From positions 124,001 through 188,000 of the IMG/VR virus record IMGVR_UViG_3300037054_000148: a stretch of 64,000 nt of DNA. One strand, written 5' to 3'. Shown here piece by piece: positions 1-30,498 of the stretch. Each line of letters opens with the position of its first letter. Within the stretch, counting starts at the first letter, position 1. The notes under the pieces were generated by a model that was not told where the DNA came from, searched no databases, and worked only from the letters and a program-made list of their open reading frames with translations. The position numbers and the translations under genes are program-made.

Positions 1-1122
1 GAAATCCAGTACAAACTCGCTTCCTCACTCTTGGCGAATAGCACCAAGTCGTTGACCGCAATGTTGCGTCAGACGGCTATCAATGCTCATTATACCAAGG
101 TCGCTGAGAAGTTCGAACAGGTACACAAAGTCGAACTCAATGAATTCCTTGAAGATGAGTCCTTCCTCAAGAAGATGAAGGGTGAAGTCGAGAAGGAATT
201 GAAGAGTGAGCCTAAGTCAGCCAAGTTGAAGAAGGCTGATGAAACTGAAGAGCCCAAGGATGAGGCTCCGAAGGATGAGGCTCCGAAGGATGAGGGAGTG
301 CCCCCAATGGACGAAATGCCCCCAGAGGGTGATGTTCCCCCAGTTGACGAGGCTATGCCCCCAGTTGACGAGACGACTCCTCCAATGGATGAGACGACGC
401 CCCCTGAAGGTGGTGCCCCTGCGGGTGAGCCTATTCCTGACGAAAAGAAGCAGGAACTCCAAGAAAAGATCGATAATCTTGAAGCTGATGTTACTTCCCT
501 TGAGGAAGCGATTGAAGGCGAAGAGGAACTCGATTTCACCAAGATCTTCAATGAAGACGACATGGGCGACAAGACCGATGCGTTGGCGAATGAGGGTGAG
601 GGCGAAGAGTTCGGTGAAGATGGTCTTCCAGTCGAAGCTGATGGTGGTGCAGGATTCTTCGGATCCGAGCCCAATGAGCTTGAAGAGGGTGGAGCAACCG
701 CATCCCCAGAGGATTTCTTCCACCATGCATCTCGTTACGACATCTCTTCCCTTGATGTGTTGCTTGCCGATCAGAAGGTAGCCGCAAAGGTCCAGGGTGT
801 GGATGATCCAATTGTCGAGCGTGGCGATATGGCTGACGACCTTCTGAATGAAGGCGGAGTGCCAGACGCTGAGGAAGATCATGAAGATGTGATTCTTTAT
901 GAGGTTCTGAAGACCCTGGGTGTGGATAAGTATGATCCGGGTGCCAAGCGTGAGGGTGAGCCCAAGCTCGAACCCCCAAAGAAGTCTGTCGCCTCCAAGG
1001 CCCCTGCCAAGCCAGCCTCCAAGGCCGCTTCAATCCGCAGTCTCGGCAATGTCAAGACCGCCACGGATATGAGTAAAGAACAGGCAATGCTTGCCAATCT
1101 TGTCTTCACGGACGACATCTAA
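1..1122 (+). CDS. Probable capsid scaffolding/head assembly protein (5' truncated)
   Basis: Frame is open from base 1. The product is very acidic, low-complexity and Pro/Glu-rich (EAPKD repeats, PPxDE repeats) with several K-x-A motifs. It lies two genes upstream of the major capsid protein. Function is inferred from composition and position. Confidence 0.55.
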   Translation, partial: EIQYKLASSLLANSTKSLTAMLRQTAINAHYTKVAEKFEQVHKVELNEFLEDESFLKKMKGEVEKELKSEPKSAKLKKADETEEPKDEAPKDEAPKDEGVPPMDEMPPEGDVPPVDEAMPPVDETTPPMDETTPPEGGAPAGEPIPDEKKQELQEKIDNLEADVTSLEEAIEGEEELDFTKIFNEDDMGDKTDALANEGEGEEFGEDGLPVEADGGAGFFGSEPNELEEGGATASPEDFFHHASRYDISSLDVLLADQKVAAKVQGVDDPIVERGDMADDLLNEGGVPDAEEDHEDVILYEVLKTLGVDKYDPGAKREGEPKLEPPKKSVASKAPAKPASKAASIRSLGNVKTATDMSKEQAMLANLVFTDDI

Positions 1123-1148
1123 ACAGTAGGCAAATAGCTCTCTGAACT

Positions 1149-1180
1149 ATCAGCCCCTCTTACGAGGGGCTGATTTTTAT
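1149..1180 (+). terminator. Rho-independent terminator
   Basis: ATCAGCCCCTC-TTAC-GAGGGGCTGAT, a perfect 11-bp stem followed by a T-tract. Confidence 0.85.
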
Positions 1181-1631: not shown

Positions 1632-1633
1632 CT

Positions 1634-2188
1634 CTATCTAGTTAATGACCAGCCCTCGTTCAAATAGTAATCAATCTGCTGATTTCTCACTCGCTTATAC
1701 TTCTGTCCCTTATACATTTTTATTGTATTAGCAAACATTTCTTTCATTGATTGTCTCCACTCCTCATTGTTGGCCACATTATTATTCCCGCGCTTCTTTG
1801 CAATGGCTGACATTTTTTGTTTAGTTTCTTTCGAGCGTTTCACTCCAAGCTGAGACCCAGCGGTTACACAGGTATTATATAGTTCCACTCCATCAGATTT
1901 CAGTTTTTCCAACCAATACTGCTCTCTAAGCAGGAGAGCTTCTCGGGTGGGCTCAGTAACCTCTATAACTGACCATTGGAATGCGTTGACTCCATATCTT
2001 TCCCACGCCCGACTTAAATGCTCATTACTGTGGATTTTTTTGTTAAGCTCATTATGGTGCCGCCGCCATCTTCGGTAGAAGTTCAGGGCTGAACCTATAT
2101 AGCAGACTCCGCTCTCCTTATTATCTATGCGATACACCCCCGCCCTCATGTCGTACGGAAAGGGGTAGGTTCCCAATGGTCTCGCCAT
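1634..2188 (-). CDS. GIY-YIG homing endonuclease, free-standing, with NUMOD3-like segment
   Basis: GVYRIDN..CYIGSA.NFYRRWRRH, conserved E (LLLREQYWL) and YN; downstream KRSKETKQKMS motif; GAGGAG RBS upstream on the minus strand. Confidence 0.93.
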   Translation of the reverse strand: MARPLGTYPFPYDMRAGVYRIDNKESGVCYIGSALNFYRRWRRHHNELNKKIHSNEHLSRAWERYGVNAFQWSVIEVTEPTREALLLREQYWLEKLKSDGVELYNTCVTAGSQLGVKRSKETKQKMSAIAKKRGNNNVANNEEWRQSMKEMFANTIKMYKGQKYKRVRNQQIDYYLNEGWSLTR

Positions 2189-3166: not shown

Positions 3167-3181
3167 AGGGAGACAAATACA

Positions 3182-4120
3182 ATGACTATTCTATCCCGCA
3201 CCCAAGCACAGACCGCCCAGCTTGGTCAGATTCTGAAGACCGCAGCCGGTCGCCAGAAGCTAGCCGCCGCTCTAGGCCCCTCTCTTCGTCGTCGCCGTGA
3301 CTACATGTCAATCGCCCGTAAGGCATTGATGGTAGAAACACTTCCCGATGGAGCCCTCCCGATTTACGACAAGGAATTTGACGAAACCGGACGCAGCTTC
3401 GTGCAGGCGTTCGTGGTCGGTGAACAGGGTGGAGACGTTGTAAACGTTGCCAACCCAATCCGTGTCACGGTCCCCACGTTTGAAATCGTGTCCAACCCCA
3501 TGATTCCAATCACCCAGATCAAAGAGCGCAGATTCGATATCGTTTCTCGCGCCCTCAATCTGGCTAAGGCCGAAGTCGGTGCCGCTGAGGACAACTACGT
3601 CTTCAACCTCTTCCTGAAGATTGATGCTGCGGCCACTACCGCAACCTCTTCGACCGGATACACTGATTACGTTTACAACAAGAGCCTTGCCTATAACGTC
3701 TCTTCATCTTCCGGACCTTACGGCCTCGCCGTTGATCCTTTCGCAGATGCTTTCGGTATGGTGCAGCGTCACGATCTCTCTGTTGCCTACATCTTCATGA
3801 ACCCTCGTGATTATGTGGACATCCTGAAGTGGACTGATGACAACATCGACCGTGAGACTCAGCGTCACTTGCTGAAAACCGGTATCATGGGCTACCTCTG
3901 GGGCGCAACGATCTTGCAGTCCAGAAAAGTCGCTTACGGTGATGTCTGGGTCATGGCTGATGCCGAGTTCCTTGGTGTCATCCCTGAGCGTGTCCCCCTG
4001 ACCGTTCTAAGTGCTGATCGCCCTGACCTTCGTCAGATTGGCTTCAGTGTTTTCGAGATTCTGGGATTTTTAATTTTCAATCCTTCTGGATTGGAGAGAA
4101 TCGTAATCACCCGGTCTTAA
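3182..4120 (+). CDS. Major capsid protein (HK97 fold)
   Basis: 312 aa with strongly C-ending codons typical of high expression. Sequence fits large-phage MCPs (ETLPDGALPIYDKE; VTVPTFEIVSNPMIPITQIKERRFDIV; YIFMNPRDY; GYLWGATI). Followed by a strong terminator. Confidence 0.85.
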   Translation: MTILSRTQAQTAQLGQILKTAAGRQKLAAALGPSLRRRRDYMSIARKALMVETLPDGALPIYDKEFDETGRSFVQAFVVGEQGGDVVNVANPIRVTVPTFEIVSNPMIPITQIKERRFDIVSRALNLAKAEVGAAEDNYVFNLFLKIDAAATTATSSTGYTDYVYNKSLAYNVSSSSGPYGLAVDPFADAFGMVQRHDLSVAYIFMNPRDYVDILKWTDDNIDRETQRHLLKTGIMGYLWGATILQSRKVAYGDVWVMADAEFLGVIPERVPLTVLSADRPDLRQIGFSVFEILGFLIFNPSGLERIVITRS

Positions 4121-4142
4121 AAAGTCCTTGATAATTAAGGCA

Positions 4143-5570: not shown

Positions 5571-5628
5571 CAACAAACAGAGTAATAGTTCAATATCCCC
5601 TACGGGGGAACTCTTCCATGGAGAACAA

Positions 5629-6312: not shown

Positions 6313-6313
6313 A

Positions 6314-6763: not shown

Positions 6764-6826
6764 ACTATTGCCCTCTCTTATTGAAGGTGTGGGTCTACAA
6801 AATAGACCACTGACACAGAGTGATCA

Positions 6827-8777: not shown

Positions 8778-8981
8778 ATGACTACAAAAATTGCTGCCGT
8801 TGACGCTGAGGCGATGAACAACCTCTTCGCTGAAGAACTCACTAAGACAGGTTCTAAGGTCGCTGCCGGAGAAAAGCTCCAGTGCTTTGACGATCACAAG
8901 GATTATGTGTCCACCCTCGAATCCGTCCTGAGTGACGACAAGAACGATGCGTGGGAACCAAATGACATGATTCTCGATTAA
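8778..8981 (+). CDS. Small acidic hypothetical protein
   Basis: 67 aa with AGGAG RBS; contains KIAA and KVAA motifs. Confidence 0.7.
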   Translation: MTTKIAAVDAEAMNNLFAEELTKTGSKVAAGEKLQCFDDHKDYVSTLESVLSDDKNDAWEPNDMILD

Positions 8982-9916: not shown

Positions 9917-10399
9917 ATGCGTGAGAAAAGAGAACTAGAAACCCCGGTTGTTGCTGCTGAACAGCCCGTCAAATTTGCCCGATTCAAGCAGATTGCCAAT
10001 GAAGATCCTGCCGCTCTGTCGGATGCCCTGTGTGAATTGTCAGAGGCATTTTCCAGTATGGCAGAGGCTTCAGAAGCATTGATCGAGAACCTCGATCTAA
10101 CCCCAACCCCTAAAGAAGCCTCTATTCGTGAAAAAGTAGCAGCCCGAAAGAAGTTCGCTACTATGTTGAAGAAGTTGGCTGAAGAGGCCCCCGAGAAGGT
10201 GGAAGAAGCTCTAAACGAGATTTATAACGCCGTAGATGAAGTGGCTCTCGCAATTGAGAACCTTTCTGGTAATCTTGGCTTTAATCTTGGAGAGACCGCT
10301 GAAGAACCAGTTGAGGGACCAGTAGATGAGGTTGAATTGGCTGAAGAGCATCTTGGAGAGCCCCCAGTTGCCCCAGCCGAAGAAAAATGCATGATGTAA
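9917..10399 (+). CDS. Acidic helical hypothetical protein (possible head/scaffold component)
   Basis: GGAGG RBS; internally duplicated helix (KQIANEDPAAL / KKLAEEAPEKV). Confidence 0.65.
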   Translation: MREKRELETPVVAAEQPVKFARFKQIANEDPAALSDALCELSEAFSSMAEASEALIENLDLTPTPKEASIREKVAARKKFATMLKKLAEEAPEKVEEALNEIYNAVDEVALAIENLSGNLGFNLGETAEEPVEGPVDEVELAEEHLGEPPVAPAEEKCMM

Positions 10400-11968: not shown

Positions 11969-12283
11969 ATGAAATGGAGTCGCACACCCATGCAAGCCGA
12001 TATTAACCAGCAAGTTTACTACCTATCTGGCAAGCCCCAGAAGCTGGCGTCTTCGAAACGAGCGTCAGATAAAGGGTTGAAGAAGGCTGCGTCGATGGGG
12101 CTCATCAGGGTCGCTGGAAACTTTTTCGAATGCCCAAGCAGTAAGGATTTATGGAAAGTGGACGGGGATAAAGTGAAACGTGTGTCTTCAGTAGAAGTGG
12201 ACTTCAACGAAAAACTTTCCGCAGCCGACCCTGAAGATCCCAATGGATATTTGAAAGATATCCTGGCCCAACTCGATTTCTAA
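11969..12283 (+). CDS. Hypothetical protein
   Basis: 104-aa ORF; contains KLAS and KKAAS motifs. Confidence 0.65.
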   Translation: MKWSRTPMQADINQQVYYLSGKPQKLASSKRASDKGLKKAASMGLIRVAGNFFECPSSKDLWKVDGDKVKRVSSVEVDFNEKLSAADPEDPNGYLKDILAQLDF

Positions 12284-12297
12284 AAAGGTAAACCCTA

Positions 12298-13620
12298 ATG
12301 GACGACAACAAGCAATTCTCTCTTATCGACTCTTTCCTTCAGGATGTAGAACCCGACTATGGGAATATTGGCCTAAAAAAGCCTCAGAAGATGGATGAGC
12401 AATTCACTGATGCCTCGTCCCAGGTGGATAACGCCTTCCTTGACCAAATTGGGGGGAGGTCCGAGCACACTGTTGTTCCTTCTGGCCGAACTGCTGCTGG
12501 GGGTCGTGAGACTAAACCCATCAGGGACGCGACTACCGGAGACTCTGCTCTTGCTGATGCGTTCAAAGCCCTTGGAGCCGTAGAGCAGCATAACGAGCTT
12601 GATGTGCTCACGGATGCAGAAATCAAAAATCGTGTCAATTACCTACTGAGTTTGGGACACAAACCCAGTCGTGTGGCGGGTATGATGGAGAAGATGGCCG
12701 AGTCGGCTCTGAAGGTCTATGACAAGAAGACCACAACTGAGTTTCTTAAAGATCAGGCTGGGCAGGCTGGACTGGCCTATTTGGAGCCTAATTTTTACAT
12801 GAATTCTTGTGTGGCATCTGCTAAGGAGATCCAGAAGAACGGTCATCTAAACGCTATGTCAGTTAAAAAGATTGCCGCTTGCCCCGGATGCAAGTATAAC
12901 AATTGCGGTAATTGCACCCTTTATAGCCGCCCCATTGTTGCTTCGGCCAAAGAGCTTGAGACTGTGGTCAAGGCAAATTTGAAGGCCAAGGATATAAAAA
13001 TTGCCGGAACTTTGAAATCCACATTAGTCAAGATGCACGAAGGTGGGGAAAAAGAGGCCCAGGCCCTCCCATATAGCCGGAATACTGAAAAGTATGTGGT
13101 CAGGACTGCTGGTGATAAGCAGTCTATGGTCCACAAAGAGGCCAGTGTTGAAGAGATTGGCACTATGGTCAGTTCAGGCATCCCCCTTAAGGATGTGTAT
13201 AAGACCGCTGCGGCTCAGTATGGTAAGACTTCTGCAATGGCTGCGATTAAACGCTACATTACGGGCCTTAAGAAGAGTGGTGCAAAAGTGGTGCTGGCTG
13301 CGGTTGACTGCACTCTGCTGAAAAACAAGCTAGCAACTGGAAATGCCATTGTTGGTGAGAGTAAGTGTGCCTCCTGCTCCTATCGAAACGGAATGCACTG
13401 CGGTTTGACTGGTGGGACGCTCCTGACATTCCCTGGGATGGATCGCGTATCTTCTAAACATATCGCTCACGAAGGCGTGAAAGACGGGCGTGAAGTTCTA
13501 TTTGAGTTTGACCTTCTTGACACCGGAGAAGATAGCCCCATCGAGTATAAGGAAGTGCCAGAGCAGGCAGATACTGATGTGGAACTGACTCGTTCGTCAG
13601 AAATCAACATCGAGGACTAA
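12298..13620 (+). CDS. Cys-rich protein with duplicated putative zinc-binding domain (probable head-associated)
   Basis: Two similar clusters, C..CPGCKYNNCGNCTL and C..CASCSYRNGMHCGL; RTA, KIA and KTA motifs. Confidence 0.6.
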   Translation: MDDNKQFSLIDSFLQDVEPDYGNIGLKKPQKMDEQFTDASSQVDNAFLDQIGGRSEHTVVPSGRTAAGGRETKPIRDATTGDSALADAFKALGAVEQHNELDVLTDAEIKNRVNYLLSLGHKPSRVAGMMEKMAESALKVYDKKTTTEFLKDQAGQAGLAYLEPNFYMNSCVASAKEIQKNGHLNAMSVKKIAACPGCKYNNCGNCTLYSRPIVASAKELETVVKANLKAKDIKIAGTLKSTLVKMHEGGEKEAQALPYSRNTEKYVVRTAGDKQSMVHKEASVEEIGTMVSSGIPLKDVYKTAAAQYGKTSAMAAIKRYITGLKKSGAKVVLAAVDCTLLKNKLATGNAIVGESKCASCSYRNGMHCGLTGGTLLTFPGMDRVSSKHIAHEGVKDGREVLFEFDLLDTGEDSPIEYKEVPEQADTDVELTRSSEINIED

Positions 13621-16856: not shown

Positions 16857-17339
16857 TTGATGTCTGATACGAATATTGTCATCGCTCAACTGAAGAGTAT
16901 GATGAGTGAGGTTCTGGAACTTCGGGATCAAAAACCTGAAGCACAATCCAAGGCCATTGAACTCTTGAAAAATGTAATCAATGCTCTCCATCTGGGGCGT
17001 AAAACAGGGGCAAAGAGGGCTGCCACAGCCCCCAGGAGCTTTGATACCCCAGCCACCGAGTATTTGTACGGTCTGAAACCTGACCTCGAATCTGGCGACC
17101 CCAACCATGATAACGGCTGGTGGGGGCTTTATCTGGGTATGCTCTCAGAGGGCAGTCCAGAAGGTTCCGGTGTTTCCAGTGGGGCCGACTCTGATATGCT
17201 TAAGCGTAATCATGGTGCTATCATCCACGAAGCAGAAGATGGCTCTGTTACCGGTCAATTCTTTCCTCTTGAAGAAGATGCGGTTGACCAATGGGAAGAG
17301 TCTATCAGTGGCGACGAACCCGAACTTTCTCACATTTAA
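16857..17339 (+). CDS. Hypothetical protein
   Basis: 160 aa; helical N-terminus ending in KRAA, followed by a small acidic domain (NGWWGL..AIIHEAEDGSV). Confidence 0.65.
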   Translation: MMSDTNIVIAQLKSMMSEVLELRDQKPEAQSKAIELLKNVINALHLGRKTGAKRAATAPRSFDTPATEYLYGLKPDLESGDPNHDNGWWGLYLGMLSEGSPEGSGVSSGADSDMLKRNHGAIIHEAEDGSVTGQFFPLEEDAVDQWEESISGDEPELSHI

Positions 17340-18640: not shown

Positions 18641-20494
18641 GTGAGTAGCAGACAGAGATTTAGCCAAAAGTCAAGGGAGTCGGTGCTGGGTGGGTTGGTT
18701 GATACTCACATCACAGACAGTACAACTCTGCTTAATGCCCTGGAATTCATTGAATCTCCTAGTGGGCTGAATATAACCTTATACCCAGTTCAGCGTGTTT
18801 TGATCAAATTGATATTTGGCATTCCGATGGACTGGGACGAACGGGAAGTGCCCGTTTACGACCAATTCTGTGAAAAGCTCCTCTTTACTTTTACAGAACG
18901 TGAATATATCCGTTATGTATTCGAGAAGGGTCGGATCAACATCCCCACCTGGGAGGATGCCAACCCGCTGGGATATAATGAGATTGACATGATTGTCGGT
19001 CGCCGTGGTGGTAAGAGCGTTGTGGTCGCCGCAGTTGCTGCCTACAAGCTCTACCTCTTGTTAAGCCATCGAGACCCCCAGGAATACTACGGCTTGGTCC
19101 CCGGTTCCCCGATTGATCTGACTATGATGGCCCAGGATTCCAAGGGGTCTAGTCGGCTTTATGATCAGCTTAAAGAGGATATCAACCGAGCCCCCTTCTT
19201 CGCCCCTTACATTAAATCCATGACAGGTGAGGAGATGACCTTCATCTCTGAATCTGACCGTGGTAAGCGAGAACTCACCCCCTCCATCAAAGCCGCCGCT
19301 TACCCCTGCACCACTAATGCCGTGCGTGGACCCAGCAGTTATTTCCTAGCCTTGGACGAGTTTGCTCACTATCGGCAGCAGATCGGTTCCACCTCTGATG
19401 AGATGTATTCCGCCGCCGCCCCCGCTACTATGCAATTCAAGGGTGGAGGAACCCGTGACGGTCTGAGGGAAAGTATGATTTTTATCATAACTTCCCCAGT
19501 AAATAAAATTGGTAAGTACTATACTTTGTTCAGGGATGCTTTATTGGAAGGCCCTTCTAGTCCTGTCCTAGCCTTCCAATGCTCAACCGCAGAGATGAAC
19601 CCTCGCTCCGACACTCCGTTCTTGAAGAAGGAGTACAAGGATAATCCTGAAAAGTTCAAGGCTGAGTATGGTGGGGAGTTTCTGGATGCATCTGAGACCT
19701 ATGTTAAAGGTTTAACGATTGATGAGTGTGTTGACCAAGATCGGGGTAATGTGACTATCCTCACTTCTTCTATGATAGGCCACAATTACTTCTGGGGTCT
19801 TGATTTGGGTATGAAACATGACGCTACGGCCCTTGCGGTCTGCCACTGGGAGGGGGGTCAGAACAAGGCATGGCTCGTATATGATTACATTGATAGGTTA
19901 ATGGTGGGCCTGGGTAAATATAAAGATGTTGCTGAACTTCCACTAGATGATGTGCTGGACTGGCTAAAGGACGCACATGCAATGCTCCCCTGCTTCCAGG
20001 GTGTGACTGACCAGTATGGTGGTTCCCTTCTGGTTCAGCTACTGAATGCAAATCAGGTAACTGGGATTGAGTTGCTTCATTTGACCTCTGGTGTTAACTC
20101 GCAAATGTACCTCACACTTAAAACTCTCATGGAGAATCGTCAGGTAAAGTTCCCTAATGTGTCTGCATTTGTCTTAGAAATGAAGCTCCTGGAAGCCTCT
20201 TTCATTAATAAATATCAGGTTATCGTTAAGGCTCCGACCGAAAAAGATGCTCATGATGATATGGCAGATGCGGCAGCTCTTGCAGCCTATAAAGCTCAGC
20301 TATGGGCCATAGGTGACGGTAAGCGTGTCATGTGGGACATCATGCAAGGGGTTCCGCAAAACATGATCCCCGGCACTATCAGGGGTGGGTGGGATATGAA
20401 TGGCTCCCTTGCCCATCTCAGATCCTACGAACGACAGCTTCAACATCAATTAAATCCCTATGGTGCGGTTCAAAACCCATGGAGAAGACATTAG
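18641..20494 (+). CDS. terL: Terminase large subunit
   Basis: Walker A VGRRGGKS, Walker B LALDEFAH, coupling motif ITSP, nuclease GLDLGMKHD and HDDMAD. Confidence 0.92.
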   Translation: MSSRQRFSQKSRESVLGGLVDTHITDSTTLLNALEFIESPSGLNITLYPVQRVLIKLIFGIPMDWDEREVPVYDQFCEKLLFTFTEREYIRYVFEKGRINIPTWEDANPLGYNEIDMIVGRRGGKSVVVAAVAAYKLYLLLSHRDPQEYYGLVPGSPIDLTMMAQDSKGSSRLYDQLKEDINRAPFFAPYIKSMTGEEMTFISESDRGKRELTPSIKAAAYPCTTNAVRGPSSYFLALDEFAHYRQQIGSTSDEMYSAAAPATMQFKGGGTRDGLRESMIFIITSPVNKIGKYYTLFRDALLEGPSSPVLAFQCSTAEMNPRSDTPFLKKEYKDNPEKFKAEYGGEFLDASETYVKGLTIDECVDQDRGNVTILTSSMIGHNYFWGLDLGMKHDATALAVCHWEGGQNKAWLVYDYIDRLMVGLGKYKDVAELPLDDVLDWLKDAHAMLPCFQGVTDQYGGSLLVQLLNANQVTGIELLHLTSGVNSQMYLTLKTLMENRQVKFPNVSAFVLEMKLLEASFINKYQVIVKAPTEKDAHDDMADAAALAAYKAQLWAIGDGKRVMWDIMQGVPQNMIPGTIRGGWDMNGSLAHLRSYERQLQHQLNPYGAVQNPWRRH

Positions 20495-23686: not shown

Positions 23687-24316
23687 GTGGAAGAAAATCT
23701 TGATTTTGAGTTTGGAGACAAGCTACCCTATCTGGATGATGAGATTCATCCTGACAGGTGGCTTCGGGCCAGAAATGAAATTGATCACGTAGCCCTTTTG
23801 GAAGAGTTCATTAAGAAACCCATAATGGGGAATGTCATAAATTGCCCGTTGGGGATTCACCGAGACTCTACCCCTTCCTTTAATATATACAGACAGTCCA
23901 ATTCTTCACATTGCTTTGGTTGCCCTGGAACCACGAAAGAGCAGTACAATGACAACGTGAACCTCGTCTCCAAATGGTTTGGTATCAATAAAGTAGCTGC
24001 CTTGCAATGGCTAGAGAAGCATTTTAAGCTCCCCCCGATTGCAGGACAACCTATCGAACCTGACGAGGAAGAAGAAAGGGACGAGGAGGAATCCGATCCA
24101 TTCACGGTGAAGGATCTGGTTCCAATGTTCCTTACGATAGCCCCCACTCTGATTGAAACAGTGGATGACGCTAAGTATCTGATAAAGAAATACTTCTTGG
24201 CTCTTCATCTTGACGATCCACTATTTTTGGCACGGGTTCTTGGACGAAAGCGGCTTGAGAGTATTAGATTATCAGGACGAGTGTCGAATGAAGGAATTGG
24301 AAGAAGCAATAAATGA
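23687..24316 (+). CDS. DNA primase zinc-binding (CHC2) domain protein
   Basis: INCPLGIHRDSTPSFNIY..HCFGC..DNVNLVSKW..AALQWL matches the DnaG CHC2 zinc finger; no Toprim domain in this ORF. Confidence 0.85.
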   Translation: MEENLDFEFGDKLPYLDDEIHPDRWLRARNEIDHVALLEEFIKKPIMGNVINCPLGIHRDSTPSFNIYRQSNSSHCFGCPGTTKEQYNDNVNLVSKWFGINKVAALQWLEKHFKLPPIAGQPIEPDEEEERDEEESDPFTVKDLVPMFLTIAPTLIETVDDAKYLIKKYFLALHLDDPLFLARVLGRKRLESIRLSGRVSNEGIGRSNK

Positions 24317-27300
24317 GCAAGATCCTGTAATAACGGGAAAGAAGCCTCGTAAAAAGAAGGAAAAGGCTGAGAAAAAGCCCAAGGCCCCCAAAGTAATTAA
24401 AACCCTCCGTGAGATATTTATGGAGAGGTTGGCCCTCATCGATATCGAAAACTTGAAGAAGCCATGGATGGCTACCAAATCGTTCAGGTTGATTGATACG
24501 GCGGAGGAGCTTCAACGCTGGGTTGATATGGTCATGAGCGATCCTGGACGCTCCCAGACCCACTCATGGGCTGCTCACACTGGCCCCGTCATTGCGGTGG
24601 ACACCGAGACGGATGGCCTGGATATTCGTGTAGTTGAAGGGAAGATGCGAACCAAGCTGGCAGGAGTCTGTCTGTCAGCCGATGGACTGGAAGGTCTCTA
24701 CATTCCGGTCGGGCATGAGAATGGGAAGAACATTCCCGCCACTGAGTTGGCCCCGATCCTCCAGAAGCTCTTTGACCAGTGCCACCTCGTATTTTTTAAC
24801 GCCAAATTTGACCGTGAGGTATTGCGACTCAGCCTTGGTCTGACTTTCAGGGATTACCCGTTCTTTGAAGATGTACAGACGCTGACCTACCTGGATGACC
24901 CTAAAGCCAAAGTTGATGACAAAGGGGCTGGCAGCCTTCAAGAGGGCCTGAAGAATCTTTCCAAGGTGAAGCTGGGGTTTGAACAGATTGAACTGGAAGA
25001 TCTGGTCAAGGTCAAGGCCAAGGTATGGAATGTGGAGTTGGAGAAGTACACCCAGCGTATGGTTTACTGCCCATTCACTTGGGTTCCTACAGAAATGGCT
25101 CTTTGGTACGCGGCTTCTGATGCAATTACCACTTGGCTGCTCTGGCGATTATTCCACCAGGAGCGAGATTTCTCCCAGATGTTGGGGGTCCATCGACTTG
25201 ACCATCTATTAGTGGACACCATTACCTGGATTGAGCGGCAGCGTCCTCGTGTGGATGGGGATCGTCTGCAAAATACTATTGACTTTCACGCTAGTCGGGT
25301 GAAGCAACTTACTGAAGAATTGGGTAAGATTTCCGGCATCGAAAATTTCAATCCCGGCTCTACTCCTCAGATCACCAAAATTCTTTTTGAGGACAGGGGT
25401 ATGGAGGTGATTGAACGGTCTGAGAAGACTAACGATCCGTCTACAGCTATTGGGGTGCTGAAAGAGCTTCATAAACGATACCCTACTGATGAATTTCTGA
25501 TTAAATTGATGGATTTTCGTGAGTACGCGGCTCTGCATCCAGCTAGTATGCGTTATGACCCAGTTGACCACACAATTAGGTTCTACCTCAAACAGAACGT
25601 TGTGGCTGGCGGTCGTCTCGCGGCTGCGGGTGGAGAGTTTGAAAAGGATGGCGGGTGCCAACTTAACCCCCAGGCTATCAAGAAGGTGGGTGGAAATTGG
25701 TGGGTCAAAGGGTGGCTGTTGGACACGCTTCCAGAAGAGTTCGCCGCTCTGACGATTCTCACGGAGTATCCGGACCCCTCTATGCTAGAACCCTCTTGTG
25801 TTAAGGATGGAAAGATCGCCCCCAATATCGACTCCAATAACCACACGGCCACCTATTTTGGCAGACGCTACTGCATGGTCCCCTCCTGTAAGTCTTGTTT
25901 ACGGGCGCTAAAACCAGAGCGGATAGACGCCAATGAGATTATCAATTTCCGAGGTCTGATTGTTGCGGATCCAGGCTGGACGATGTTCAGTTCTGACTAC
26001 AGCAATATTGAAATGAGAGTAGCAGCAAACATTTCAAAAGAACCGCTATTCATCAAGGAGTTCATGGAAGGGGCGGGAGACTTCCACTCTCTCACCGCTA
26101 TGGCCCTTTTCCCTGAGTTTTCTAATCCCAACACCCCCAAGGCCAGAAAAAAAGAGCTTCGTGCATTGGCCAAAATTATTAACTTCGCTTTGTTGTATGG
26201 CGGGACTGCCTATACGATCAAAGAGAACATGAATAAGGAGGGGTTCAACATTAGCTTTGAAGAAGCTGAAGAACTGGTCCAAAAATATTGGGATTCAGTG
26301 CCCACGTTCGCCGCATGGTGCCAGAATAAGCGTGATGTGGCCAGAGCGAAATTGATCTGCCGTACTCCAACGGGTCGGATCGTTAATTTTGAATCAGCCA
26401 TGAAGGGATTCCGTATCCATAAGCCAGAGCAGTGGGAGAAGGACAATTTCTGGGAGTGGAAGAAGTTATGTAAGCGTGAGGTAGAGCTTACTCGCTTGGA
26501 GCTTAAAGAGGATGCGTTGGCGGTAAAGAGGACTGCGGAGGCAATTTGGGCTAATCCTAAATCTGGAGTGCGTAACGTTCAGGAGTTCAATCGTTTCCTG
26601 GGCAAGGCAGAGCGGGTAGCCATCAACATCCCGCTTCAGGGGACCGCAGGAGATCTAATGCGCTCCGCCCTAAATCGGATTCGTATTTGGGCATTGGCCA
26701 ACCCAGGTCTAGAGAAGGTGTTCCGTCTTCACCTTACTGTGCATGATGAAATTGACTTTTCAGTGAAGAATGAGTTCGTACCCTATGTGCTGCCTAGGGT
26801 TAACCGATTGATGAAGCTCCGCAAACTCCATGCATCTAAGGGATGGCCGGTACCTATCGAAACAGACTGTGAGTATGGACAGACCTGGGATGTGAACCAG
26901 CACCTTACTGGAGATGATGGTCATAAGGCGGCTGGATGGACGGCCATTGCGGGAATGGAAGCTTACACCCCTCCTGATTTCGCTGAAGATGTGGTAGACC
27001 GGATTGTTGACACATGGATGAAGGGCGACCGAGAGCGGGTAACTAAGTGGTTGCAACAGCTTCATCCCAGAGTTCATGGCTATTTGGCAGAGTTTAATGA
27101 TGACCCTGAGACGGTCCGTCATTACCTCATTGTAATGCTCCAACTCCACGAATTTTGGAAAATCGATGAAGATGAAAGTGACACGTTGACCTTGTTGGAG
27201 TATGCGGAGGAGAATGGTTTGAAGATAACTGAAGAGCCCCTGGTGGGTAATCTTTCGGGCTATTTGAACTCCGTCCCCCCGGAGGACATACCTATTGTCA

Positions 27301-27677
27301 CAGAGGTGGTGTTGGAACCAGAGGCTCAGTCTGAGCCAGAGCTAGCGGTAGAGCCGGAAACTGAGAAAATCACTTCCATCGAACAGCTTCATGAAATGGT
27401 ACAGAATGTCGTAGAGATGGCAGCAGCCGGAGAAGTGGAAGAGGAAGTGTTCTTTCAGGAACCCCCTCGTAAAGAGGTAGCTCAGGTTGTGGGTACAGCC
27501 CCAAAAATTCCAGTTGTTCGGAATATGGACCTGGATGAACAAAAGGTGTTCAAGACACTAATAGGAGCAGGTTTGGGTAGAAAGGAGATCGAATTTGTTT
27601 ACGAATTTGATAGCAAATATTACAAGATACCTAACACTATTACTGATGTGATTCCCAAGGAATACCTGCTATGTTAG
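24288..27677 (+). CDS. polA: Family A DNA polymerase with 3'-5' exonuclease, no 5'-3' exonuclease (ORF open from 24210)
   Basis: ExoI AVDTETDG, ExoII FFNAKFD, ExoIII YAASDA; motif A DYSNIEMR, motif B RALAKIINFALLYG, motif C LTVHDEI. Confidence 0.95.
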   Translation: MKELEEAINEQDPVITGKKPRKKKEKAEKKPKAPKVIKTLREIFMERLALIDIENLKKPWMATKSFRLIDTAEELQRWVDMVMSDPGRSQTHSWAAHTGPVIAVDTETDGLDIRVVEGKMRTKLAGVCLSADGLEGLYIPVGHENGKNIPATELAPILQKLFDQCHLVFFNAKFDREVLRLSLGLTFRDYPFFEDVQTLTYLDDPKAKVDDKGAGSLQEGLKNLSKVKLGFEQIELEDLVKVKAKVWNVELEKYTQRMVYCPFTWVPTEMALWYAASDAITTWLLWRLFHQERDFSQMLGVHRLDHLLVDTITWIERQRPRVDGDRLQNTIDFHASRVKQLTEELGKISGIENFNPGSTPQITKILFEDRGMEVIERSEKTNDPSTAIGVLKELHKRYPTDEFLIKLMDFREYAALHPASMRYDPVDHTIRFYLKQNVVAGGRLAAAGGEFEKDGGCQLNPQAIKKVGGNWWVKGWLLDTLPEEFAALTILTEYPDPSMLEPSCVKDGKIAPNIDSNNHTATYFGRRYCMVPSCKSCLRALKPERIDANEIINFRGLIVADPGWTMFSSDYSNIEMRVAANISKEPLFIKEFMEGAGDFHSLTAMALFPEFSNPNTPKARKKELRALAKIINFALLYGGTAYTIKENMNKEGFNISFEEAEELVQKYWDSVPTFAAWCQNKRDVARAKLICRTPTGRIVNFESAMKGFRIHKPEQWEKDNFWEWKKLCKREVELTRLELKEDALAVKRTAEAIWANPKSGVRNVQEFNRFLGKAERVAINIPLQGTAGDLMRSALNRIRIWALANPGLEKVFRLHLTVHDEIDFSVKNEFVPYVLPRVNRLMKLRKLHASKGWPVPIETDCEYGQTWDVNQHLTGDDGHKAAGWTAIAGMEAYTPPDFAEDVVDRIVDTWMKGDRERVTKWLQQLHPRVHGYLAEFNDDPETVRHYLIVMLQLHEFWKIDEDESDTLTLLEYAEENGLKITEEPLVGNLSGYLNSVPPEDIPIVTEVVLEPEAQSEPELAVEPETEKITSIEQLHEMVQNVVEMAAAGEVEEEVFFQEPPRKEVAQVVGTAPKIPVVRNMDLDEQKVFKTLIGAGLGRKEIEFVYEFDSKYYKIPNTITDVIPKEYLLC

Positions 27678-28138
27678 TGACATCTAAAAATCCAAAATAT
27701 CTCAATTTAGGGCGAGATATTGAGAACGCTACGCTTCGAATGGCTCATATGCGGCGATTAATCGATATGATGCAGGGGTGCCTTGGGTCTGGCGTGACAG
27801 TCCTGGAGTCCTTCAAGGAATTAGATAATAAGGGAAAGTATGCCAAAGTTGAAGGTGAGAAACTGGAACATCTGGTTCAAGTCAAAATGATTTTGTCAAA
27901 TATCCAGGAGTGTATTTCTATCGCTGATAGCGAATTTGAGAAATATGCAAATGAGTTTGACAAATTAGATAAGACATTCATTAGACTGAAGAATGCCCCT
28001 CAACCCAAAGAGAAGAAAGCGGCAGAACCCCAGCCCCAGCTTCCCGAGGCTACAGCAGCCTCATTCCCCGATGCCTTACCGGCTCCCATAGAACCACCCG
28101 AACTGCCCGAATCCCCAGAAGAGTCCAAGGACAACTGA
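27671..28138 (+). CDS. Coiled-coil hypothetical protein with Pro-rich tail
   Basis: 155-aa ORF overlapping the polymerase stop. Confidence 0.65.
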   Translation: MLVTSKNPKYLNLGRDIENATLRMAHMRRLIDMMQGCLGSGVTVLESFKELDNKGKYAKVEGEKLEHLVQVKMILSNIQECISIADSEFEKYANEFDKLDKTFIRLKNAPQPKEKKAAEPQPQLPEATAASFPDALPAPIEPPELPESPEESKDN

Positions 28139-28182
28139 TAAAAATGGACTTTTCCTCCCTTTCGTAGGGAGTTTGGTGGTAT

Positions 28183-30498
28183 ATGGCAGGAAGACGTAGG
28201 CAGACGAGAATCAAAGTAGCAAGTAAGGATATTCCGCAGTTCTCTGTGGGGAAATACTCCAGTTTTGATACCAATGGCACAGTTGTGGACCCCATTAGGA
28301 GTGCCTCCTCTGCTGATGCTAAAGTCAGAATGGCCAATAAGATGCGGAAGAGTGCTGATCTATGGGCTGGAGAGAATGGTCCTGCCAACATTTCTGATTC
28401 TGAGAATATTGGCTATTATAGCTATGAGTTCCCTGTGGATGCGTTGGAACTCCCGCAATCCAGAGCCCAGGAACTCCGATTTTACCGTCTAGCCTATGAT
28501 CGTGACCCCATCGTTGGAAGGGGTATTGATCTCCATACTGAAATCCCCATGAACAAGATCAACCTTGATCGTCCTAAGTGCTCATCTGAGGCTTTTGGAG
28601 ATTACATTTACGACTTCTATCAGGGATTGGTAACCAATTCAAGATTGTTTGAGACCCTTCTTCACGCTAGCCGTGAGTATTGGAACATTGGTGAAGCCTT
28701 CCTATTCGTAGAGGACGACCCTGACATCAAGCCATCTGAGGCGGCTGAAGAGTATGTTCAGGCCATGGATGAACAAGACGATCAGAAAATGGCAGAACAG
28801 GGTCAGTCCCGTTCTTATTTCGAAACTGACAACACCTCTTGGGGTTCTGAAGCGGTCAGCATGACCACCAAGCACTCCTCCGCCAAGTTGGCAGCCCAAT
28901 TGGGGTTTGATCCTCTTGCTGAGACTGACAAGGCTATTCGCAAGAAAGTAGCGGCTCTGACTCAGATTATGAGTGACTTGAAGACCTTGGAAAAGACTGC
29001 TGAGGCTAAACAAGCTGCCCCCCCAGCAGATGATGGAGGTGGAGCAGCCGTTGGAGAATCAACTGATGCCCCAACCGGTGGAGCGGATCTTCCGGCCCCA
29101 GGGGATGAGACGGGTGGGGGTGACGCAGACTTAGGCTTCGAAGACGACACGGCTGGTGGAGGTGGTGGAATTATGCCCTCCAGCGGTGGCGGAGGCGGGG
29201 GAGGGGGCTTTGGTGGCGGTGGCATGGATATGGGCCTGGATGATACGGGCACTGGCATGGAGCAGCCTGTTCCTCCTAAAGACTTAGAAACTCGCAGAAT
29301 GGAAGAAGTGATCAAGCTCTTGAGGAGAAAGAAAGACCTCTTGGAGGAGTTAGAAGATCTTCATGAGATCCGAAAGAACGACTTCGAGCTTTTCTCGCAT
29401 CTGTGCAACAAGAATTACATGGGATTTGACCGTATTCAGCTTCTTCCGCCTGAAAATGTGGAAATCAAGAAATCTTCAACCTTTGGTTCTGAACCTACGA
29501 TATTCTATAAGCCCCCAGAAGACGCCAAGGCGTCCTATATTGACAATCCGGATACCCCGGATGCGGTCCGAGATAGCCTTTCGGCGGATGGGGTCATCCC
29601 CTTGAATGATAACCCATTCAAGGGCTCTTATGCGATTCATTTCGCTCGTAAAAAAGCCCCATTTGAGGATCATGGACGTAGTATTCTTCAGCGTTGCATG
29701 AGAAGTATCATCTACCGTGAGAAGCTCCGTCAGGTCCAGACAACCATCGCTTCCCGCAATATGACCCCTAAAACTTTAGTGGTCGCTCCGGGTGTGGCGA
29801 ATGGAGAATTGATGGCCCTTAGAGGCCATATTGACGAGGCCAAAGCGGATCCGGATTATACCGTAGTGGTGAACTATGAATGCACCTGGAACGAGATTGG
29901 TTCTGAGGGTCGCCTTCTCACCCTGGATGGTGAGTGGAGCCATACCGGCAATGATCTAGCCATCGGTTTGGGCTTCAGTCCTGATATCCTCAACGGCGAA
30001 GGGCTCTACAGCAACACCCGTACTCAGTTGGATATCCTTAGCACTACCTACCTCCAGTTCCGCGCAGTCGTTGCTTATATCGTGCAGGAATTGATATTCA
30101 AGCCCATCGCAATGAAGAAGGGCTTCTATGAGATCGACCGTTATGGCCGTCCCCGCTGGCTCTACCCAGAAGTAAAATTTGGCCGCATGGCTCTTCGCAA
30201 TGCCGGAGAGACCTATCAGATGCTGTTTGATCTTTACCAGAAGGGTTCGGTGCCGGTTAGCGTCCTGCTTGAGCTTCTTGATGTAGACCCAGAAGTTTGC
30301 CGTAAGAACCTGGAGGCTGACCTCTTTACTGTCAATGACTCTAAGTTTAACGCTTTCTTGGAGAACCTCTATAGCAACGTTGCTGGCTCTGGCTCGTTCA
30401 CTACAACTGACATTGCAGATAAATTCAAACGTGCGCTTGGTTTGAAGGAAAAGGATATCGATGAATCTGAGATCGAAGGTTCTGGCGAGGGCATCTAA
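28183..30498 (+). CDS. Portal protein with a large low-complexity internal insertion
   Basis: FYRLAYDRDPIVGRGIDLHTEIP, EYW..GEAFLF and HFARK..PFEDHGRSILQRC..YREKLRQVQ fit large-phage portals; Gly/Asp-rich insert in the middle. Confidence 0.82.
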   Translation: MAGRRRQTRIKVASKDIPQFSVGKYSSFDTNGTVVDPIRSASSADAKVRMANKMRKSADLWAGENGPANISDSENIGYYSYEFPVDALELPQSRAQELRFYRLAYDRDPIVGRGIDLHTEIPMNKINLDRPKCSSEAFGDYIYDFYQGLVTNSRLFETLLHASREYWNIGEAFLFVEDDPDIKPSEAAEEYVQAMDEQDDQKMAEQGQSRSYFETDNTSWGSEAVSMTTKHSSAKLAAQLGFDPLAETDKAIRKKVAALTQIMSDLKTLEKTAEAKQAAPPADDGGGAAVGESTDAPTGGADLPAPGDETGGGDADLGFEDDTAGGGGGIMPSSGGGGGGGGFGGGGMDMGLDDTGTGMEQPVPPKDLETRRMEEVIKLLRRKKDLLEELEDLHEIRKNDFELFSHLCNKNYMGFDRIQLLPPENVEIKKSSTFGSEPTIFYKPPEDAKASYIDNPDTPDAVRDSLSADGVIPLNDNPFKGSYAIHFARKKAPFEDHGRSILQRCMRSIIYREKLRQVQTTIASRNMTPKTLVVAPGVANGELMALRGHIDEAKADPDYTVVVNYECTWNEIGSEGRLLTLDGEWSHTGNDLAIGLGFSPDILNGEGLYSNTRTQLDILSTTYLQFRAVVAYIVQELIFKPIAMKKGFYEIDRYGRPRWLYPEVKFGRMALRNAGETYQMLFDLYQKGSVPVSVLLELLDVDPEVCRKNLEADLFTVNDSKFNAFLENLYSNVAGSGSFTTTDIADKFKRALGLKEKDIDESEIEGSGEGI

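What the first reader, a model, noticed from the sequence alone, without database searches (positions are those of the whole stretch)
1..30498. Recurrent K-x-A motif across head-region proteins: a candidate virion-wide proteolytic processing or packaging signal
Seen: many head-region ORFs carry K-(T/V/I/L/Q/K/A)-A motifs, often in pairs or close to termini. Examples: scaffold (KLAS, KVAE, KVAAK, KAAS, KTAT), capsid N-terminus (ILKTA-AGRQKLAA), 7732 (MKNAA), 8778 (KIAA, KVAA), 11969 (KLAS, KKAAS), 12298 (KIAA, KTAA), 14121 (many), 16857 (KRAA) and portal (KVAS, KLAA, KVAA, KTAEAKQAA). By eye they look sparse in the replication genes. Established: T4 gp21 and phiKZ gp175 prohead proteases cleave many head proteins at short motifs (L/I-x-E; S/A/G-x-E). 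Inference: this phage may use an analogous system with K-x-A specificity. The protease itself is not in this window.
Basis: partly seen in the sequence, partly recalled or inferred. Interest (0 to 1): 0.7.

Follow-up and report, generated by a model that had tools for sequence, protein, structure and literature searches.

The report
Lys-x-Ala head-protein cleavage motif
In this 314-kb jumbo phage the short motif Lys-x-Ala, usually followed by Ser, Ala or Gly, is strongly over-represented only in head-assembly proteins; it brackets the catalytic core of a herpesvirus/T4-like prohead protease encoded just upstream of the window, so it is most likely that protease's previously undescribed cutting signal.

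Summary
In window 1-30498, K-x-A occurs 81 times against 50.5 expected (z 4.7); the rest of the window has 37 against 42.9. Of all 400 a-x-b patterns, K-x-A ranks first in the whole head module (117 vs 65.1, z 6.4). It also ranks first in the head genes of Tunturiibacter phage Tunturi_5 and Bacillus phage G. The refined motif K-x-A-[A/S/G] gives 56 vs 15.3 (z 10.6) in the head module and 73 vs 60 elsewhere in the genome. Block shuffles, mirror motifs and codon usage rule out composition or a DNA-level word.

The protease sits 223 nt upstream of base 1. Its model has the T4 gp21 / herpesvirus assemblin fold (Z 10.1 and 9.1). Conserved K-x-A-S/A sites lie in the disordered flanks on both sides of its core. 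The C-side site is basic-x-Ala in about 95% of 77 diverse homologues.

The best reading is a gp21/gp175-like, virion-wide processing system with new specificity: P3 Lys, P1 Ala, small P1', as in herpesvirus Ala|Ser sites. Cleavage itself is inferred, not shown, and MCP cleavage is uncertain. I found no published report of this motif. I rate it a new variant of a known kind, of moderate to high interest.

The parts
1..1122 (+). Scaffold-like protein. It is 419 aa and its ORF starts 137 nt before the window. It is acidic and Pro-rich, and lies between the protease and the MCP.
   Evidence: It has 9 K-x-A vs 4.2 expected. K-x-A-[ASG] sites are K51 (nt 13-24), K305 (775-786), K383 (1009-1020) and K387 (1021-1032), plus KTAT at K398. 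A cluster of sites 20-40 residues from the C-terminus recurs in all orthologues. It has no PHROG hit, so the scaffold role is inferred from synteny and composition.
3182..4120 (+). Major capsid protein (312 aa) with two N-terminal motif copies: K19-T-A-A (nt 3236-3247) and K26-L-A-A (nt 3257-3268).
   Evidence: It matches phrog_2522 at E 3.6e-41. It is 66% identical to Tunturi_5 gp334 and 36% to phage G gp27, and matches PDB 6WKK at E 4e-53. It has 2 K-x-A-[ASG] vs 0.24 expected. At least one of the two sites is kept in every clade relative, and both are absent in phage G.
7732..8712 (+). A 326-aa protein of unknown function with K-N-A-A at residues 3-6.
   Evidence: It is one of 12 of 32 head-module proteins with K-x-A in the first 30 residues; elsewhere the figure is 32 of 341 (Fisher p 6.6e-5).
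8778..8981 (+). A 67-aa protein with KIAA (K4) and KVAA (K27).
   Evidence: It has 2 K-x-A-[ASG] vs 0.12 expected. The orthologue in L016 also has 2.
9917..10399 (+). A 160-aa protein with 5 K-x-A, clustered at residues 66-88.
   Evidence: 5 vs 1.7 expected, p 0.01; site contexts.
11969..12283 (+). A 104-aa protein with four overlapping sites at residues 25-42 (KLAS, KRAS, KKAA, KAAS).
   Evidence: It has 4 K-x-A-[ASG] vs 0.30 expected.
12298..13620 (+). A 440-aa Cys-containing candidate internal head protein, syntenic with Tunturi_5 gp348.
   Evidence: It has 8 K-x-A vs 4.5 and 5 K-x-A-[ASG] vs 1.14. Tunturi_5 gp348 has 18 vs 7.4 and the L031 orthologue 10 vs 4.0.
14121..16856 (+). A 911-aa candidate ejection or internal head protein. 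Its C-terminal third matches Tunturi_5 gp350, annotated 'DarB-like antirestriction protein'.
   Evidence: It has 16 K-x-A vs 4.6 and 8 K-x-A-[ASG] vs 1.17. It matches phrog_1915 and Tunturi_5 gp350 by tblastn. gp350 has 16 vs 8.9.
16857..17339 (+). A 160-aa protein with a single KRAA (K53).
   Evidence: It is not individually significant (1 vs 0.7).
27671..28138 (+). A 155-aa protein immediately upstream of the portal gene, with 5 K-x-A.
   Evidence: 5 vs 1.3 expected, p 0.007.
28183..30498 (+). Portal protein (771 aa). Sites are K11 and K56, ahead of the conserved core, and K235, K255, K271 and K276 inside a Gly/Asp-rich insert (about residues 195-360) that phage G lacks.
   Evidence: It matches phrog_16240 at E 8e-26 and has 9 K-x-A vs 3.8. 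In the alignment with L043, L045, Tunturi_5 gp7 and phage G gp14, a K-x-A site before the core is kept in all five, and the insert carries K-x-A-A sites at shifting positions.
18641..20494 (+). Large terminase. This is an internal negative control and not part of the system.
   Evidence: It matches phrog_2 and has 3 K-x-A vs 2.3-2.5 expected.
24210..27677 (+). DNA polymerase embedded in the head module. This is an internal negative control.
   Evidence: It matches phrog_17 at E 5.5e-80 and has 4 K-x-A vs 6.2 expected.

Best explanation
K-x-A followed by a small residue (A/S/G) is the recognition motif of the phage's prohead (head maturation) serine protease. The protease is encoded at genome 122896-123777, 223 nt upstream of the window. 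It has the T4 gp21 / herpesvirus assemblin fold.

Proposed mechanism, all steps inferred:
1. The protease is built into the procapsid.
2. It frees its own core by cutting the K-x-A-S/A sites in its disordered N- and C-terminal flanks.
3. It detaches and fragments the scaffold-like protein at the site cluster near its C-terminus and at internal sites.
4. It trims the portal N-terminus and/or its disordered insert.
5. It processes about ten further head-internal or ejection proteins at multiple sites.
6. It may remove 21-28 residues from the MCP N-terminus.

By analogy with every characterised enzyme of this fold, which reads P3-x-P1 and cuts after P1, the scissile bond is predicted to follow the Ala: K-x-A | S/A/G.

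Shown here: the enrichment, its restriction to head proteins, its conservation across relatives, the protease's identity and fold, and the motif's position around the protease core. Inferred: that cutting occurs, where it occurs, and which proteins are true substrates.
For: 1. Enrichment. K-x-A is rank 1 of 400 a-x-b patterns in the head module (117/65.1, z 6.4). K-x-A-[ASG] is 56 vs 15.3 (z 10.6) there and 73 vs 60 elsewhere. P1' is A/S/G in 56 of 117 head sites vs 25.7 expected, whereas non-head K-x-A sites are followed by E/K.

2. Not composition and not DNA. Block shuffles and mirror motifs, codon usage, and specificity for K at P3 and A at P1 all agree.

3. Internal negative controls. Homing endonucleases, TerL and DNA polymerase inside the module show 13 vs 14.0.

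4. Independent lineages of different base composition.
- Tunturi_5: rank 1, 105/59.6. gp328 has 19 vs 9, gp332 16 vs 5.6, gp348 18 vs 7.4 and gp350 16 vs 8.9. K-x-x-S is top at spacing 3.
- Phage G head genes: rank 1, 59/32.5. The adjacent non-head genes rank 125.
- Nine IMG/VR relatives at GC 42-54% show the same pattern.

5. Protease.
- It matches phrog_18299 'head maturation protease'.
- The AF2 model has core residues 56-246 at block-mean pLDDT above 90 almost throughout (one block 83) and low-confidence flanks.
- The best structural matches are T4 gp21 5jbl (Z 10.1), VZV protease (Z 9.1), HCMV (7.4) and KSHV (5.8).
- H60, H114 and S170 are invariant in 77 homologues.

6. Autoprocessing-like layout.
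- Six of the protease's seven K-x-A lie in the flanks.
- The N-side site just before the core and the C-side site K271-A-A273-S are conserved out to phage G gp19 at 30% identity.
- In 77 homologues the C-side columns are K/R in 70 of 73, A in 68 of 72 and S in 37.
- 99 of 141 family representatives carry [KR]-x-A-[SAG] within 60 aa after the core, vs 31.4 +/- 5 in shuffles.

7. C-terminal extensions of 141 representatives. K-x-A is the top a-x-b pattern (468/256, z 13.3) and P1' is Ser in 116 vs 34 expected.

8. N-terminal bias. K-x-A falls in the first 30 residues in 12 of 32 head proteins vs 32 of 341 others (p 6.6e-5).

9. Precedent.
- SPN3US gp245 cuts after A-x-E in many head proteins, with several motif copies per propeptide (PMC10052503).
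- Herpesvirus assemblin self-releases at an R-site and frees the scaffold at a C-terminal M-site, for example YLQA-T and VQA-S in PrV (PMC4498786).
Against: - There is no experimental evidence of cleavage for this phage or any relative that I could find. The one paper likely to hold phage G virion mass spectrometry (PMC7316594) is not in the library.
- MCP cleavage is doubtful. Its whole N-terminus is highly conserved, so site conservation there is not specific to the motif. One relative has lost the first site and another has Thr at P1' of the second. Phage G's MCP has no K-x-A, and the sequence deposited with its capsid structure (280 residues) is nearly as long as the annotated 282-aa gp27.
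- The protease matches no Pfam protease family and no PDB sequence, and Foldseek E-values are weak, about 0.1. Fold assignment therefore rests on one aligner's Z scores on an AF2 model.
- The third catalytic residue is not identified. H196 behaves as a zinc ligand, interchanging H and C.
- More distant carriers of the protease family do not share the signal. Erwinia Alexandravirus shows none, and two loci at about 40% identity are mixed.
- The complex prediction of the protease core with the scaffold C-end gave no answer.
Confidence: 0.65

Rival explanations
1. K-x-A-[S/A/G] is a short linear binding motif rather than a cleavage site. It could be a capsid-targeting or packaging tag, or a tether recognised by the scaffold, the portal or the inner shell surface, that brings these proteins into the procapsid without being cut.
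For: The motif is restricted to head-module proteins. It lies in disordered flanks and at termini, as targeting motifs do. The protease's C-terminal tail and the scaffold C-terminus are the regions that usually tether to the shell.
Against: There are up to 16-25 copies per protein, often overlapping or a few residues apart. That pattern fits multi-site propeptide degradation (SPN3US gp53) better than a targeting tag. The motif sits exactly at both boundaries of the protease core, the classic autoprocessing layout. Its P3-x-P1 form with small P1' matches the substrate grammar of assemblin-fold proteases.
Confidence: 0.15
2. The motif is read by a different enzyme: a second phage or host protease, or a lysine-modifying enzyme acting on head proteins. 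The assemblin-like protease would then have another specificity.
For: Nothing links the motif to this particular enzyme except co-location and the flanking sites. The wider protease family does not always co-occur with the enrichment.
Against: The motif is conserved at the protease's own core boundaries across 77-141 homologues. The Erwinia phage, whose protease ends right at the core with no tail, also lacks the enrichment, which is the co-variation expected if this enzyme reads the motif. T4/phiKZ-type x-E motifs are not enriched (AxE 71/74, LxE 89/77), so there is no competing candidate motif.
Confidence: 0.08
3. It is a chance or compositional artefact: Lys/Ala-rich helical or low-complexity segments in scaffold-like proteins give many K-x-A by accident, and the reader picked the pattern by eye.
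For: The enriched proteins are rich in K and A, and several are low-complexity.
Against: Block-wise shuffles that keep local composition leave z at 5.6-6.4 for K-x-A and about 10.5 for K-x-A-[ASG]. The mirror motifs are flat or slightly depleted. Other K...A spacings except +3 are near 1.0-1.3. The pattern is rank 1 of 400 in three phages of very different base composition.
Confidence: 0.03

Closest known systems
Motif-directed head-protein processing by the T4 gp21 / phiKZ gp175 / SPN3US gp245 prohead proteases
   Same: A single prohead serine protease of the same fold (5jbl Z 10.1). A three-residue P3-x-P1 motif. Many head and ejection proteins carry it, often several copies per propeptide. 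The portal and the protease itself are among the carriers (SPN3US). The gene sits beside the scaffold and MCP genes.
   Different: The motif is K-x-A with small P1', not (L/I)-x-E, (S/A/G)-x-E or A-x-E, and x-E motifs are not enriched here. The protease matches no Pfam protease family and carries a Cys/His zinc-knuckle insert. [quoted passage not shown] Cleavage here is predicted, not measured.
Herpesvirus assemblin (pUL26) with its release (R) and maturational (M) sites
   Same: The fold (VZV Z 9.1, HCMV 7.4, KSHV 5.8). Predicted P1 Ala with Ser-type P1', as in PrV YLQA-T and VQA-S. One conserved site directly after the protease core, like the R-site, and sites a few tens of residues from the scaffold C-terminus, like the M-site.
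   Different: P3 is Lys (or Arg in relatives) rather than the aliphatic residue seen in herpesviruses. In this phage the protease and scaffold are separate genes. Many homologues have 200-270-aa C-terminal extensions, but these are not detectably homologous to this scaffold. The Ser-His-His triad is not established. Many more substrates are predicted than in herpesviruses.
HK97-type (Peptidase S78) prohead proteases
   Same: The same general role and gene neighbourhood: the protease gene sits next to the scaffold and capsid genes (own knowledge).
   Different: There is no sequence match to the S78 model. As far as I know, HK97 mainly removes the capsid delta domain rather than processing many internal proteins at a repeated motif.

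Membership tests
Assemblin / T4 gp21-fold ('SH') prohead serine proteases | Characteristic beta-barrel protease fold shared by T4 gp21 and herpesvirus proteases | tested here: met
   AF2 model with a 77-sequence alignment: mean pLDDT 78.6, core block means above 90 almost throughout. VIA-align top hits are 5jbl_A at Z 10.1 (130 residues aligned), VZV protease at Z 9.1 and HCMV at 7.4. The next hits are unrelated MCE domains at Z 6.6 or below. Foldseek is weak (E about 0.1), but its top list is dominated by the same proteases.
Assemblin / T4 gp21-fold ('SH') prohead serine proteases | Invariant catalytic Ser and His | tested here: met
   S170 (S-M-G), H114 (E-H) and H60 are invariant in 77 of 77 homologues. 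From memory, the H114-S170 spacing of 56 is close to T4 gp21's. The third triad member is not identified, and geometry in the model was not inspected.
Assemblin / T4 gp21-fold ('SH') prohead serine proteases | Match to a curated family model (Pfam S21, S77, S78 or S80) | tested here: not met
   There is no Pfam protease hit for the protein or for any of the 77 aligned homologues, only zinc-ribbon noise. There is no PDB sequence hit. Only phrog_18299 'head maturation protease' matches (E 1.5e-18).
Assemblin / T4 gp21-fold ('SH') prohead serine proteases | Gene placed next to the scaffold and major capsid genes | tested here: met
   The order is protease, scaffold-like protein, MCP within 5 kb. 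The same order is seen in Tunturi_5 (gp331, gp332, gp334) and phage G (gp19, gp21, gp27).
Assemblin / T4 gp21-fold ('SH') prohead serine proteases | Proteolytic activity and autoprocessing | not testable with these tools
   This needs recombinant enzyme or virion mass spectrometry.
Virion-wide motif-directed head processing (T4 / phiKZ / SPN3US type) | One short motif statistically over-represented in head proteins only | tested here: met
   replicated in Tunturi_5 and phage G.
Virion-wide motif-directed head processing (T4 / phiKZ / SPN3US type) | Motif at the boundaries of the protease's own catalytic domain | tested here: met
Virion-wide motif-directed head processing (T4 / phiKZ / SPN3US type) | Mature virion proteins begin immediately after the motif | not testable with these tools
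   No proteomic data with semi-specific searches were accessible. The phage G proteomics paper does not discuss cleavage, its supplements are not held, and PMC7316594 is not held.
Virion-wide motif-directed head processing (T4 / phiKZ / SPN3US type) | Glu at P1 | tested here: not met
   A/L/I/S/G/V-x-E are all within about 15% of expectation, so this is not the same specificity class.
Herpesvirus-type R-site/M-site architecture | Ala at P1 with Ser-like P1', one site after the protease domain and one near the scaffold C-terminus | tested here: inconclusive
   The sequence pattern fits, but the scissile bond is not demonstrated. P3 is basic rather than aliphatic. The protease and scaffold are separate genes here.

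The most novel reading that the evidence does not exclude
A very large, almost wholly uncultured clade of assemblin-fold prohead proteases uses a previously unrecognised specificity, basic-x-Ala | Ser/Ala/Gly. The clade has 1,525 representatives of 50%-identity clusters at E<=1e-3 and includes phage G, Tunturi_5 and cluster C mycobacteriophage fusions. The Ala|Ser scissile pair and the arrangement 'release site after the protease core plus site near the scaffold C-terminus' are the same as in herpesviruses. That would imply this cleavage grammar predates the split of tailed phages and herpesviruses, rather than being a herpesvirus peculiarity. It would also allow sequence-only prediction of the processed head proteome of megaphages.
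Probability: 0.3. Interest if true: 0.75.

Novelty: new variant of a known kind. Interest (0 to 1): 0.62.

Why it matters
Prohead-protease specificities are known for only a few phage groups: T4, the phiKZ-like phages and SPN3US (all cutting after Glu), and HK97-type phages.

If K-x-A | S/A/G is confirmed, four things follow.
1. It would give the first cleavage rule for the phage G / Tunturi-type jumbo phages and for hundreds of uncultured relatives.
2. The mature head and ejection proteome of such phages could be predicted from sequence. About 12 candidate substrates are predicted here.
3. It identifies which large unknown proteins are probably packaged inside the head.
4. It adds a phage counterpart to the herpesvirus Ala|Ser sites, which bears on the shared ancestry of capsid maturation in tailed phages and herpesviruses.

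It can be tested directly in cultured phages: phage G, Tunturi 5 and cluster C mycobacteriophages.

Tried and rejected
- Nucleotide search of the phage collection with window 4320-8712 found nothing.
- The first structure prediction, with 8 close sequences, was unusable (pLDDT 36.7). It was replaced by a 77-sequence alignment.
- Profile searches of the protease against PDB sequences and Pfam gave only zinc-finger noise.
- Complex prediction of protease core 50-252 with scaffold residues 372-419 returned 'no answer' (score 0.03). This is not evidence either way.
- I looked for published cleavage data:
  - The phage G megaphage paper has proteomics but no cleavage analysis, and no supplements are held.
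  - Gonzalez et al. 2020 is not held.
  - The Tunturi paper does not mention a protease.
  - Text searches for K-X-A/KXA with prohead terms found nothing relevant.
- I tested whether the C-terminal extensions of ~500-aa homologues are scaffold fusions. There is no detectable homology to this scaffold (best E 0.003), so I do not claim it.
- I tested whether the motif extends to all carriers of the protease family. It does not. The Erwinia Alexandravirus locus is negative, two metagenomic loci at about 40% identity are mixed, and mycobacteriophage Myrna shows it mainly in the protease-fusion protein gp97, as K/R-x-A.
- I considered H196 as a herpes-like third catalytic His. It interchanges with Cys, so it is more likely a zinc ligand.

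Full report
**Context.** The window is bases 124001-188000 of a single 313,597-bp contig with 49% GC, so this is a jumbo phage. Its major capsid protein (window 3182-4120) is 66% identical to that of Tunturiibacter phage Tunturi_5, a 309-kb myovirus of Acidobacteriota. It is 49% identical to an uncultured 485-kb phage and 36% to Bacillus phage G gp27. It matches the solved phage G capsid protein 6WKK.

Window 1-30498 contains the following genes:
- a scaffold-like protein, whose ORF starts 137 nt before the window
- the MCP
- an HNH homing endonuclease and three GIY-YIG homing endonucleases
- about ten proteins of unknown function
- the large terminase
- a DNA polymerase
- the portal

The rest of the window holds tail-fibre-like and replication or recombination genes: clamp loader, helicase, UvsX-like recombinase and exonuclease.

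Among the nine genes in the whole genome with p<=0.02, eight lie between 118 and 154.5 kb. That head module extends about 6 kb upstream of the window. It includes an 843-aa protein (16 vs 8.1), a 221-aa protein (6 vs 1.5), the protease (7 vs 1.9) and the scaffold-like protein (9 vs 4.2).

To remove the bias of a pattern picked by eye, I scored all 400 a-x-b patterns. K-x-A is first in the head module (117 vs 65.1, z 6.4; the runner-up has z 3.4) and unremarkable elsewhere.

Further controls:
- Other K...A spacings are near expectation, except +3, which reflects K-x-A-A. A-x-K is 0.87 of expectation.
- Shuffling only within 10-, 20- or 40-residue blocks keeps z at 5.6-6.4, so locally K/A-rich segments are not the cause. 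The mirror motifs are flat.
- Codon usage at motif Lys and Ala equals background, so there is no underlying DNA word.
- Only Lys at the first position and Ala at the third are enriched.
- Genes that lie inside the module but are not virion parts (three homing endonucleases, terminase, DNA polymerase) show 13 vs 14.0.

**Refining the motif.** In head proteins the residue after K-x-A is A, S or G in 56 of 117 cases against 25.7 expected. In non-head proteins it is mostly E or K. K-x-A-[ASG] occurs 56 times vs 15.3 expected in the head module (z 10.6) and 73 vs 60 in the other 85,000 residues of the genome. K-x-A falls within the first 30 residues in 12 of 32 head-module proteins and in 32 of 341 others (p 6.6e-5).

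**Relatives.**
- *Tunturi_5.* The head module is syntenic, and K-x-A is again the top pattern (105 vs 59.6). K-x-x-S is the top pattern at spacing 3, which points to K-x-A-S. The carriers are gp328, annotated 'DNA ejection protein' (19 vs 9.0), the scaffold-position protein gp332 (16 vs 5.6), gp348 (18 vs 7.4) and gp350, annotated 'DarB-like' (16 vs 8.9). Its replication genes are flat.
- *Phage G.* In head genes gp4-gp28, K-x-A is rank 1 (59 vs 32.5). It is rank 125 in the next 25 kb. The carriers are the protease gp19 (8 vs 2.5), gp21 (7 vs 2.7), gp7 (14 vs 7.5) and the portal.
- *IMG/VR loci.* Nine loci with proteases 59-84% identical and 42-54% GC show the same enrichment in the protease, the downstream scaffold-position protein, the large upstream protein and, with two sites, the MCP.
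- *Pattern of conservation.* In the variable proteins, site positions drift while site numbers are maintained. That is how short linear motifs in disordered regions behave.

**The protease.** It matches phrog_18299 'head maturation protease' but no Pfam family and no PDB sequence.

A whole-library profile search found 1,525 representatives of 50%-identity clusters at E<=1e-3. Many are about 500 aa, with the protease domain first.

With a 77-sequence alignment, AlphaFold gives a confident core at residues 56-246 and low-confidence flanks. An exhaustive structural comparison places T4 gp21 first (Z 10.1), followed by the varicella-zoster (9.1), cytomegalovirus (7.4) and KSHV (5.8) proteases. H60, H114 and S170 are invariant. 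A Cys/His cluster forms a probable zinc knuckle.

**The motif brackets the protease core.** Six of the enzyme's seven K-x-A lie in the disordered flanks.
- *N-side.* A site immediately before the first core strand is conserved from this phage to phage G: K-N-A-S and K-I-A-G here, and K-T-A-A and K-I-A-P in gp19.
- *C-side.* K271-A-A273-S274 sits in an otherwise unalignable tail, yet K271 and A273 are invariant in the 10-sequence alignment that includes phage G. In 77 homologues of 35-86% identity the columns are K/R in 70 of 73, A in 68 of 72 and S in 37.
- *Family-wide.* Of 141 representatives, 99 carry [KR]-x-A-[SAG], most often K-A-A-S, within 60 residues after the core. Shuffled tails give 31.4 +/- 5.
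- *C-terminal extensions.* In the same proteins K-x-A is the top a-x-b pattern (468 vs 256), and Ser follows it 116 times vs 34 expected.

**Mechanism.** Enzymes of this fold read a P3-x-P1 motif and cut after P1:
- SPN3US gp245 cuts after A-x-E, with several motif copies in some propeptides and with self-cleavage (PMC10052503).
- Herpesvirus assemblin cuts after Ala at an R-site that releases the protease and at an M-site near the scaffold C-terminus. In pseudorabies virus these are YLQA-T and VQA-S (PMC4498786).

The layout found here matches that grammar. There are sites on both sides of the protease core, a cluster 20-40 residues from the scaffold C-terminus, sites near many N-termini, and numerous sites in large internal proteins. 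I therefore read the motif as P3 Lys, P1 Ala and a small P1', with the cut after Ala. T4/phiKZ-type x-E motifs are not enriched, so the specificity differs from the known jumbo-phage systems and resembles the herpesvirus one at P1/P1'.

**Limits.**
- Nothing here shows a peptide bond being cut.
- The capsid protein is the weakest case.
  - Its two sites are conserved, but so is its entire N-terminus.
  - One relative lacks the first site and another has Thr after the second.
  - Phage G's MCP has no K-x-A, and its deposited sequence (280 residues) is nearly as long as the annotated 282-aa gp27.
- The signal is specific to this clade.
  - An Erwinia Alexandravirus has a 29%-identical protease that ends at the core with no tail. 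It shows no enrichment. This co-variation mildly supports the link between enzyme and motif.
  - Myrna shows K/R-x-A mainly in its protease-fusion protein gp97.
  - Two metagenomic loci at about 40% identity are mixed.
- A complex prediction gave no answer.
- I found no paper that reports this motif, but the phage G capsid paper with virion mass spectrometry could not be read.

**Verdict.** It is a new variant (new specificity, uncharacterised protease clade) of a known kind of system, and mass spectrometry of cultured relatives can test it directly.

Noticed in passing
window 1634-2188 (-), 4320-5570 (+), 10504-11193 (+), 22779-23675 (-); also L001:12720-13421 and L001:16737-17561 upstream: The head module carries at least six free-standing homing-endonuclease genes: five GIY-YIG/NUMOD3 and one HNH. 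They sit between essential structural genes, some on the opposite strand. Tunturi_5 annotates none at the corresponding positions.
   Followed up: partly
window 24210-27677: A family-A-like DNA polymerase gene (phrog_17) lies between the large terminase and the portal, inside the head module. Tunturi_5 has the same arrangement (gp1 TerL ... gp5 polymerase, gp7 portal).
   Followed up: partly
window about 28765-29260 (portal residues about 195-360): The portal protein carries a Gly/Asp/Ala-rich, apparently disordered insert of about 165 residues. Phage G's portal lacks it. Its sequence varies among relatives, but it always holds several K-x-A-A sites.
   Followed up: partly
window 12298-13620, 14121-16856; L001:14182-16713: C-x-x-C is strongly over-represented in head-module proteins (14 vs 1.7, z 9.5). 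The pairs look like zinc knuckles in the 843-, 440- and 911-aa candidate internal proteins. Scaffold-position proteins of relatives have Cys-rich stretches interleaved with K-x-A sites.
   Followed up: no
L001:18896-19777 (protease, upstream of the window): The protease core contains an invariant C180/C183/C194/C219 cluster, with H196 interchanging with Cys. This is a probable zinc-binding insert that, to my knowledge, has not been described in T4 gp21 or the herpesvirus proteases.
   Followed up: partly
window 30498-35864: A block of three ORFs (1065, 218 and 505 aa) has only 1-2% Lys. The last has tail-fibre and collagen-like matches. They contrast sharply with the 6-12% Lys of the head proteins.
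   Followed up: no
G000 genome 38807-40957 (-), 77429-81883 (+), 86036-88657 (+), outside the window: Three large proteins are made of collagen-like G-x-T triplet repeats (162-282 G-x-T each; G 28-36%, T 22-27%). They dominate the residue-pair statistics of the non-head genome.
   Followed up: no
L047:10701-14336 (Mycobacterium phage Myrna gp97): The 1211-aa protein annotated 'tape measure' begins with a domain of this prohead-protease family (H-E-N and S-M-G motifs and the Cys knuckle). It sits just upstream of the capsid gene, so the annotation is probably wrong. It carries K/R-x-A at about twice expectation.
   Followed up: partly
window 1-64000: ARAGORN finds no tRNA genes in the window, although the related Tunturi_5 genome encodes 43 (PMC11924767).
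   Followed up: no
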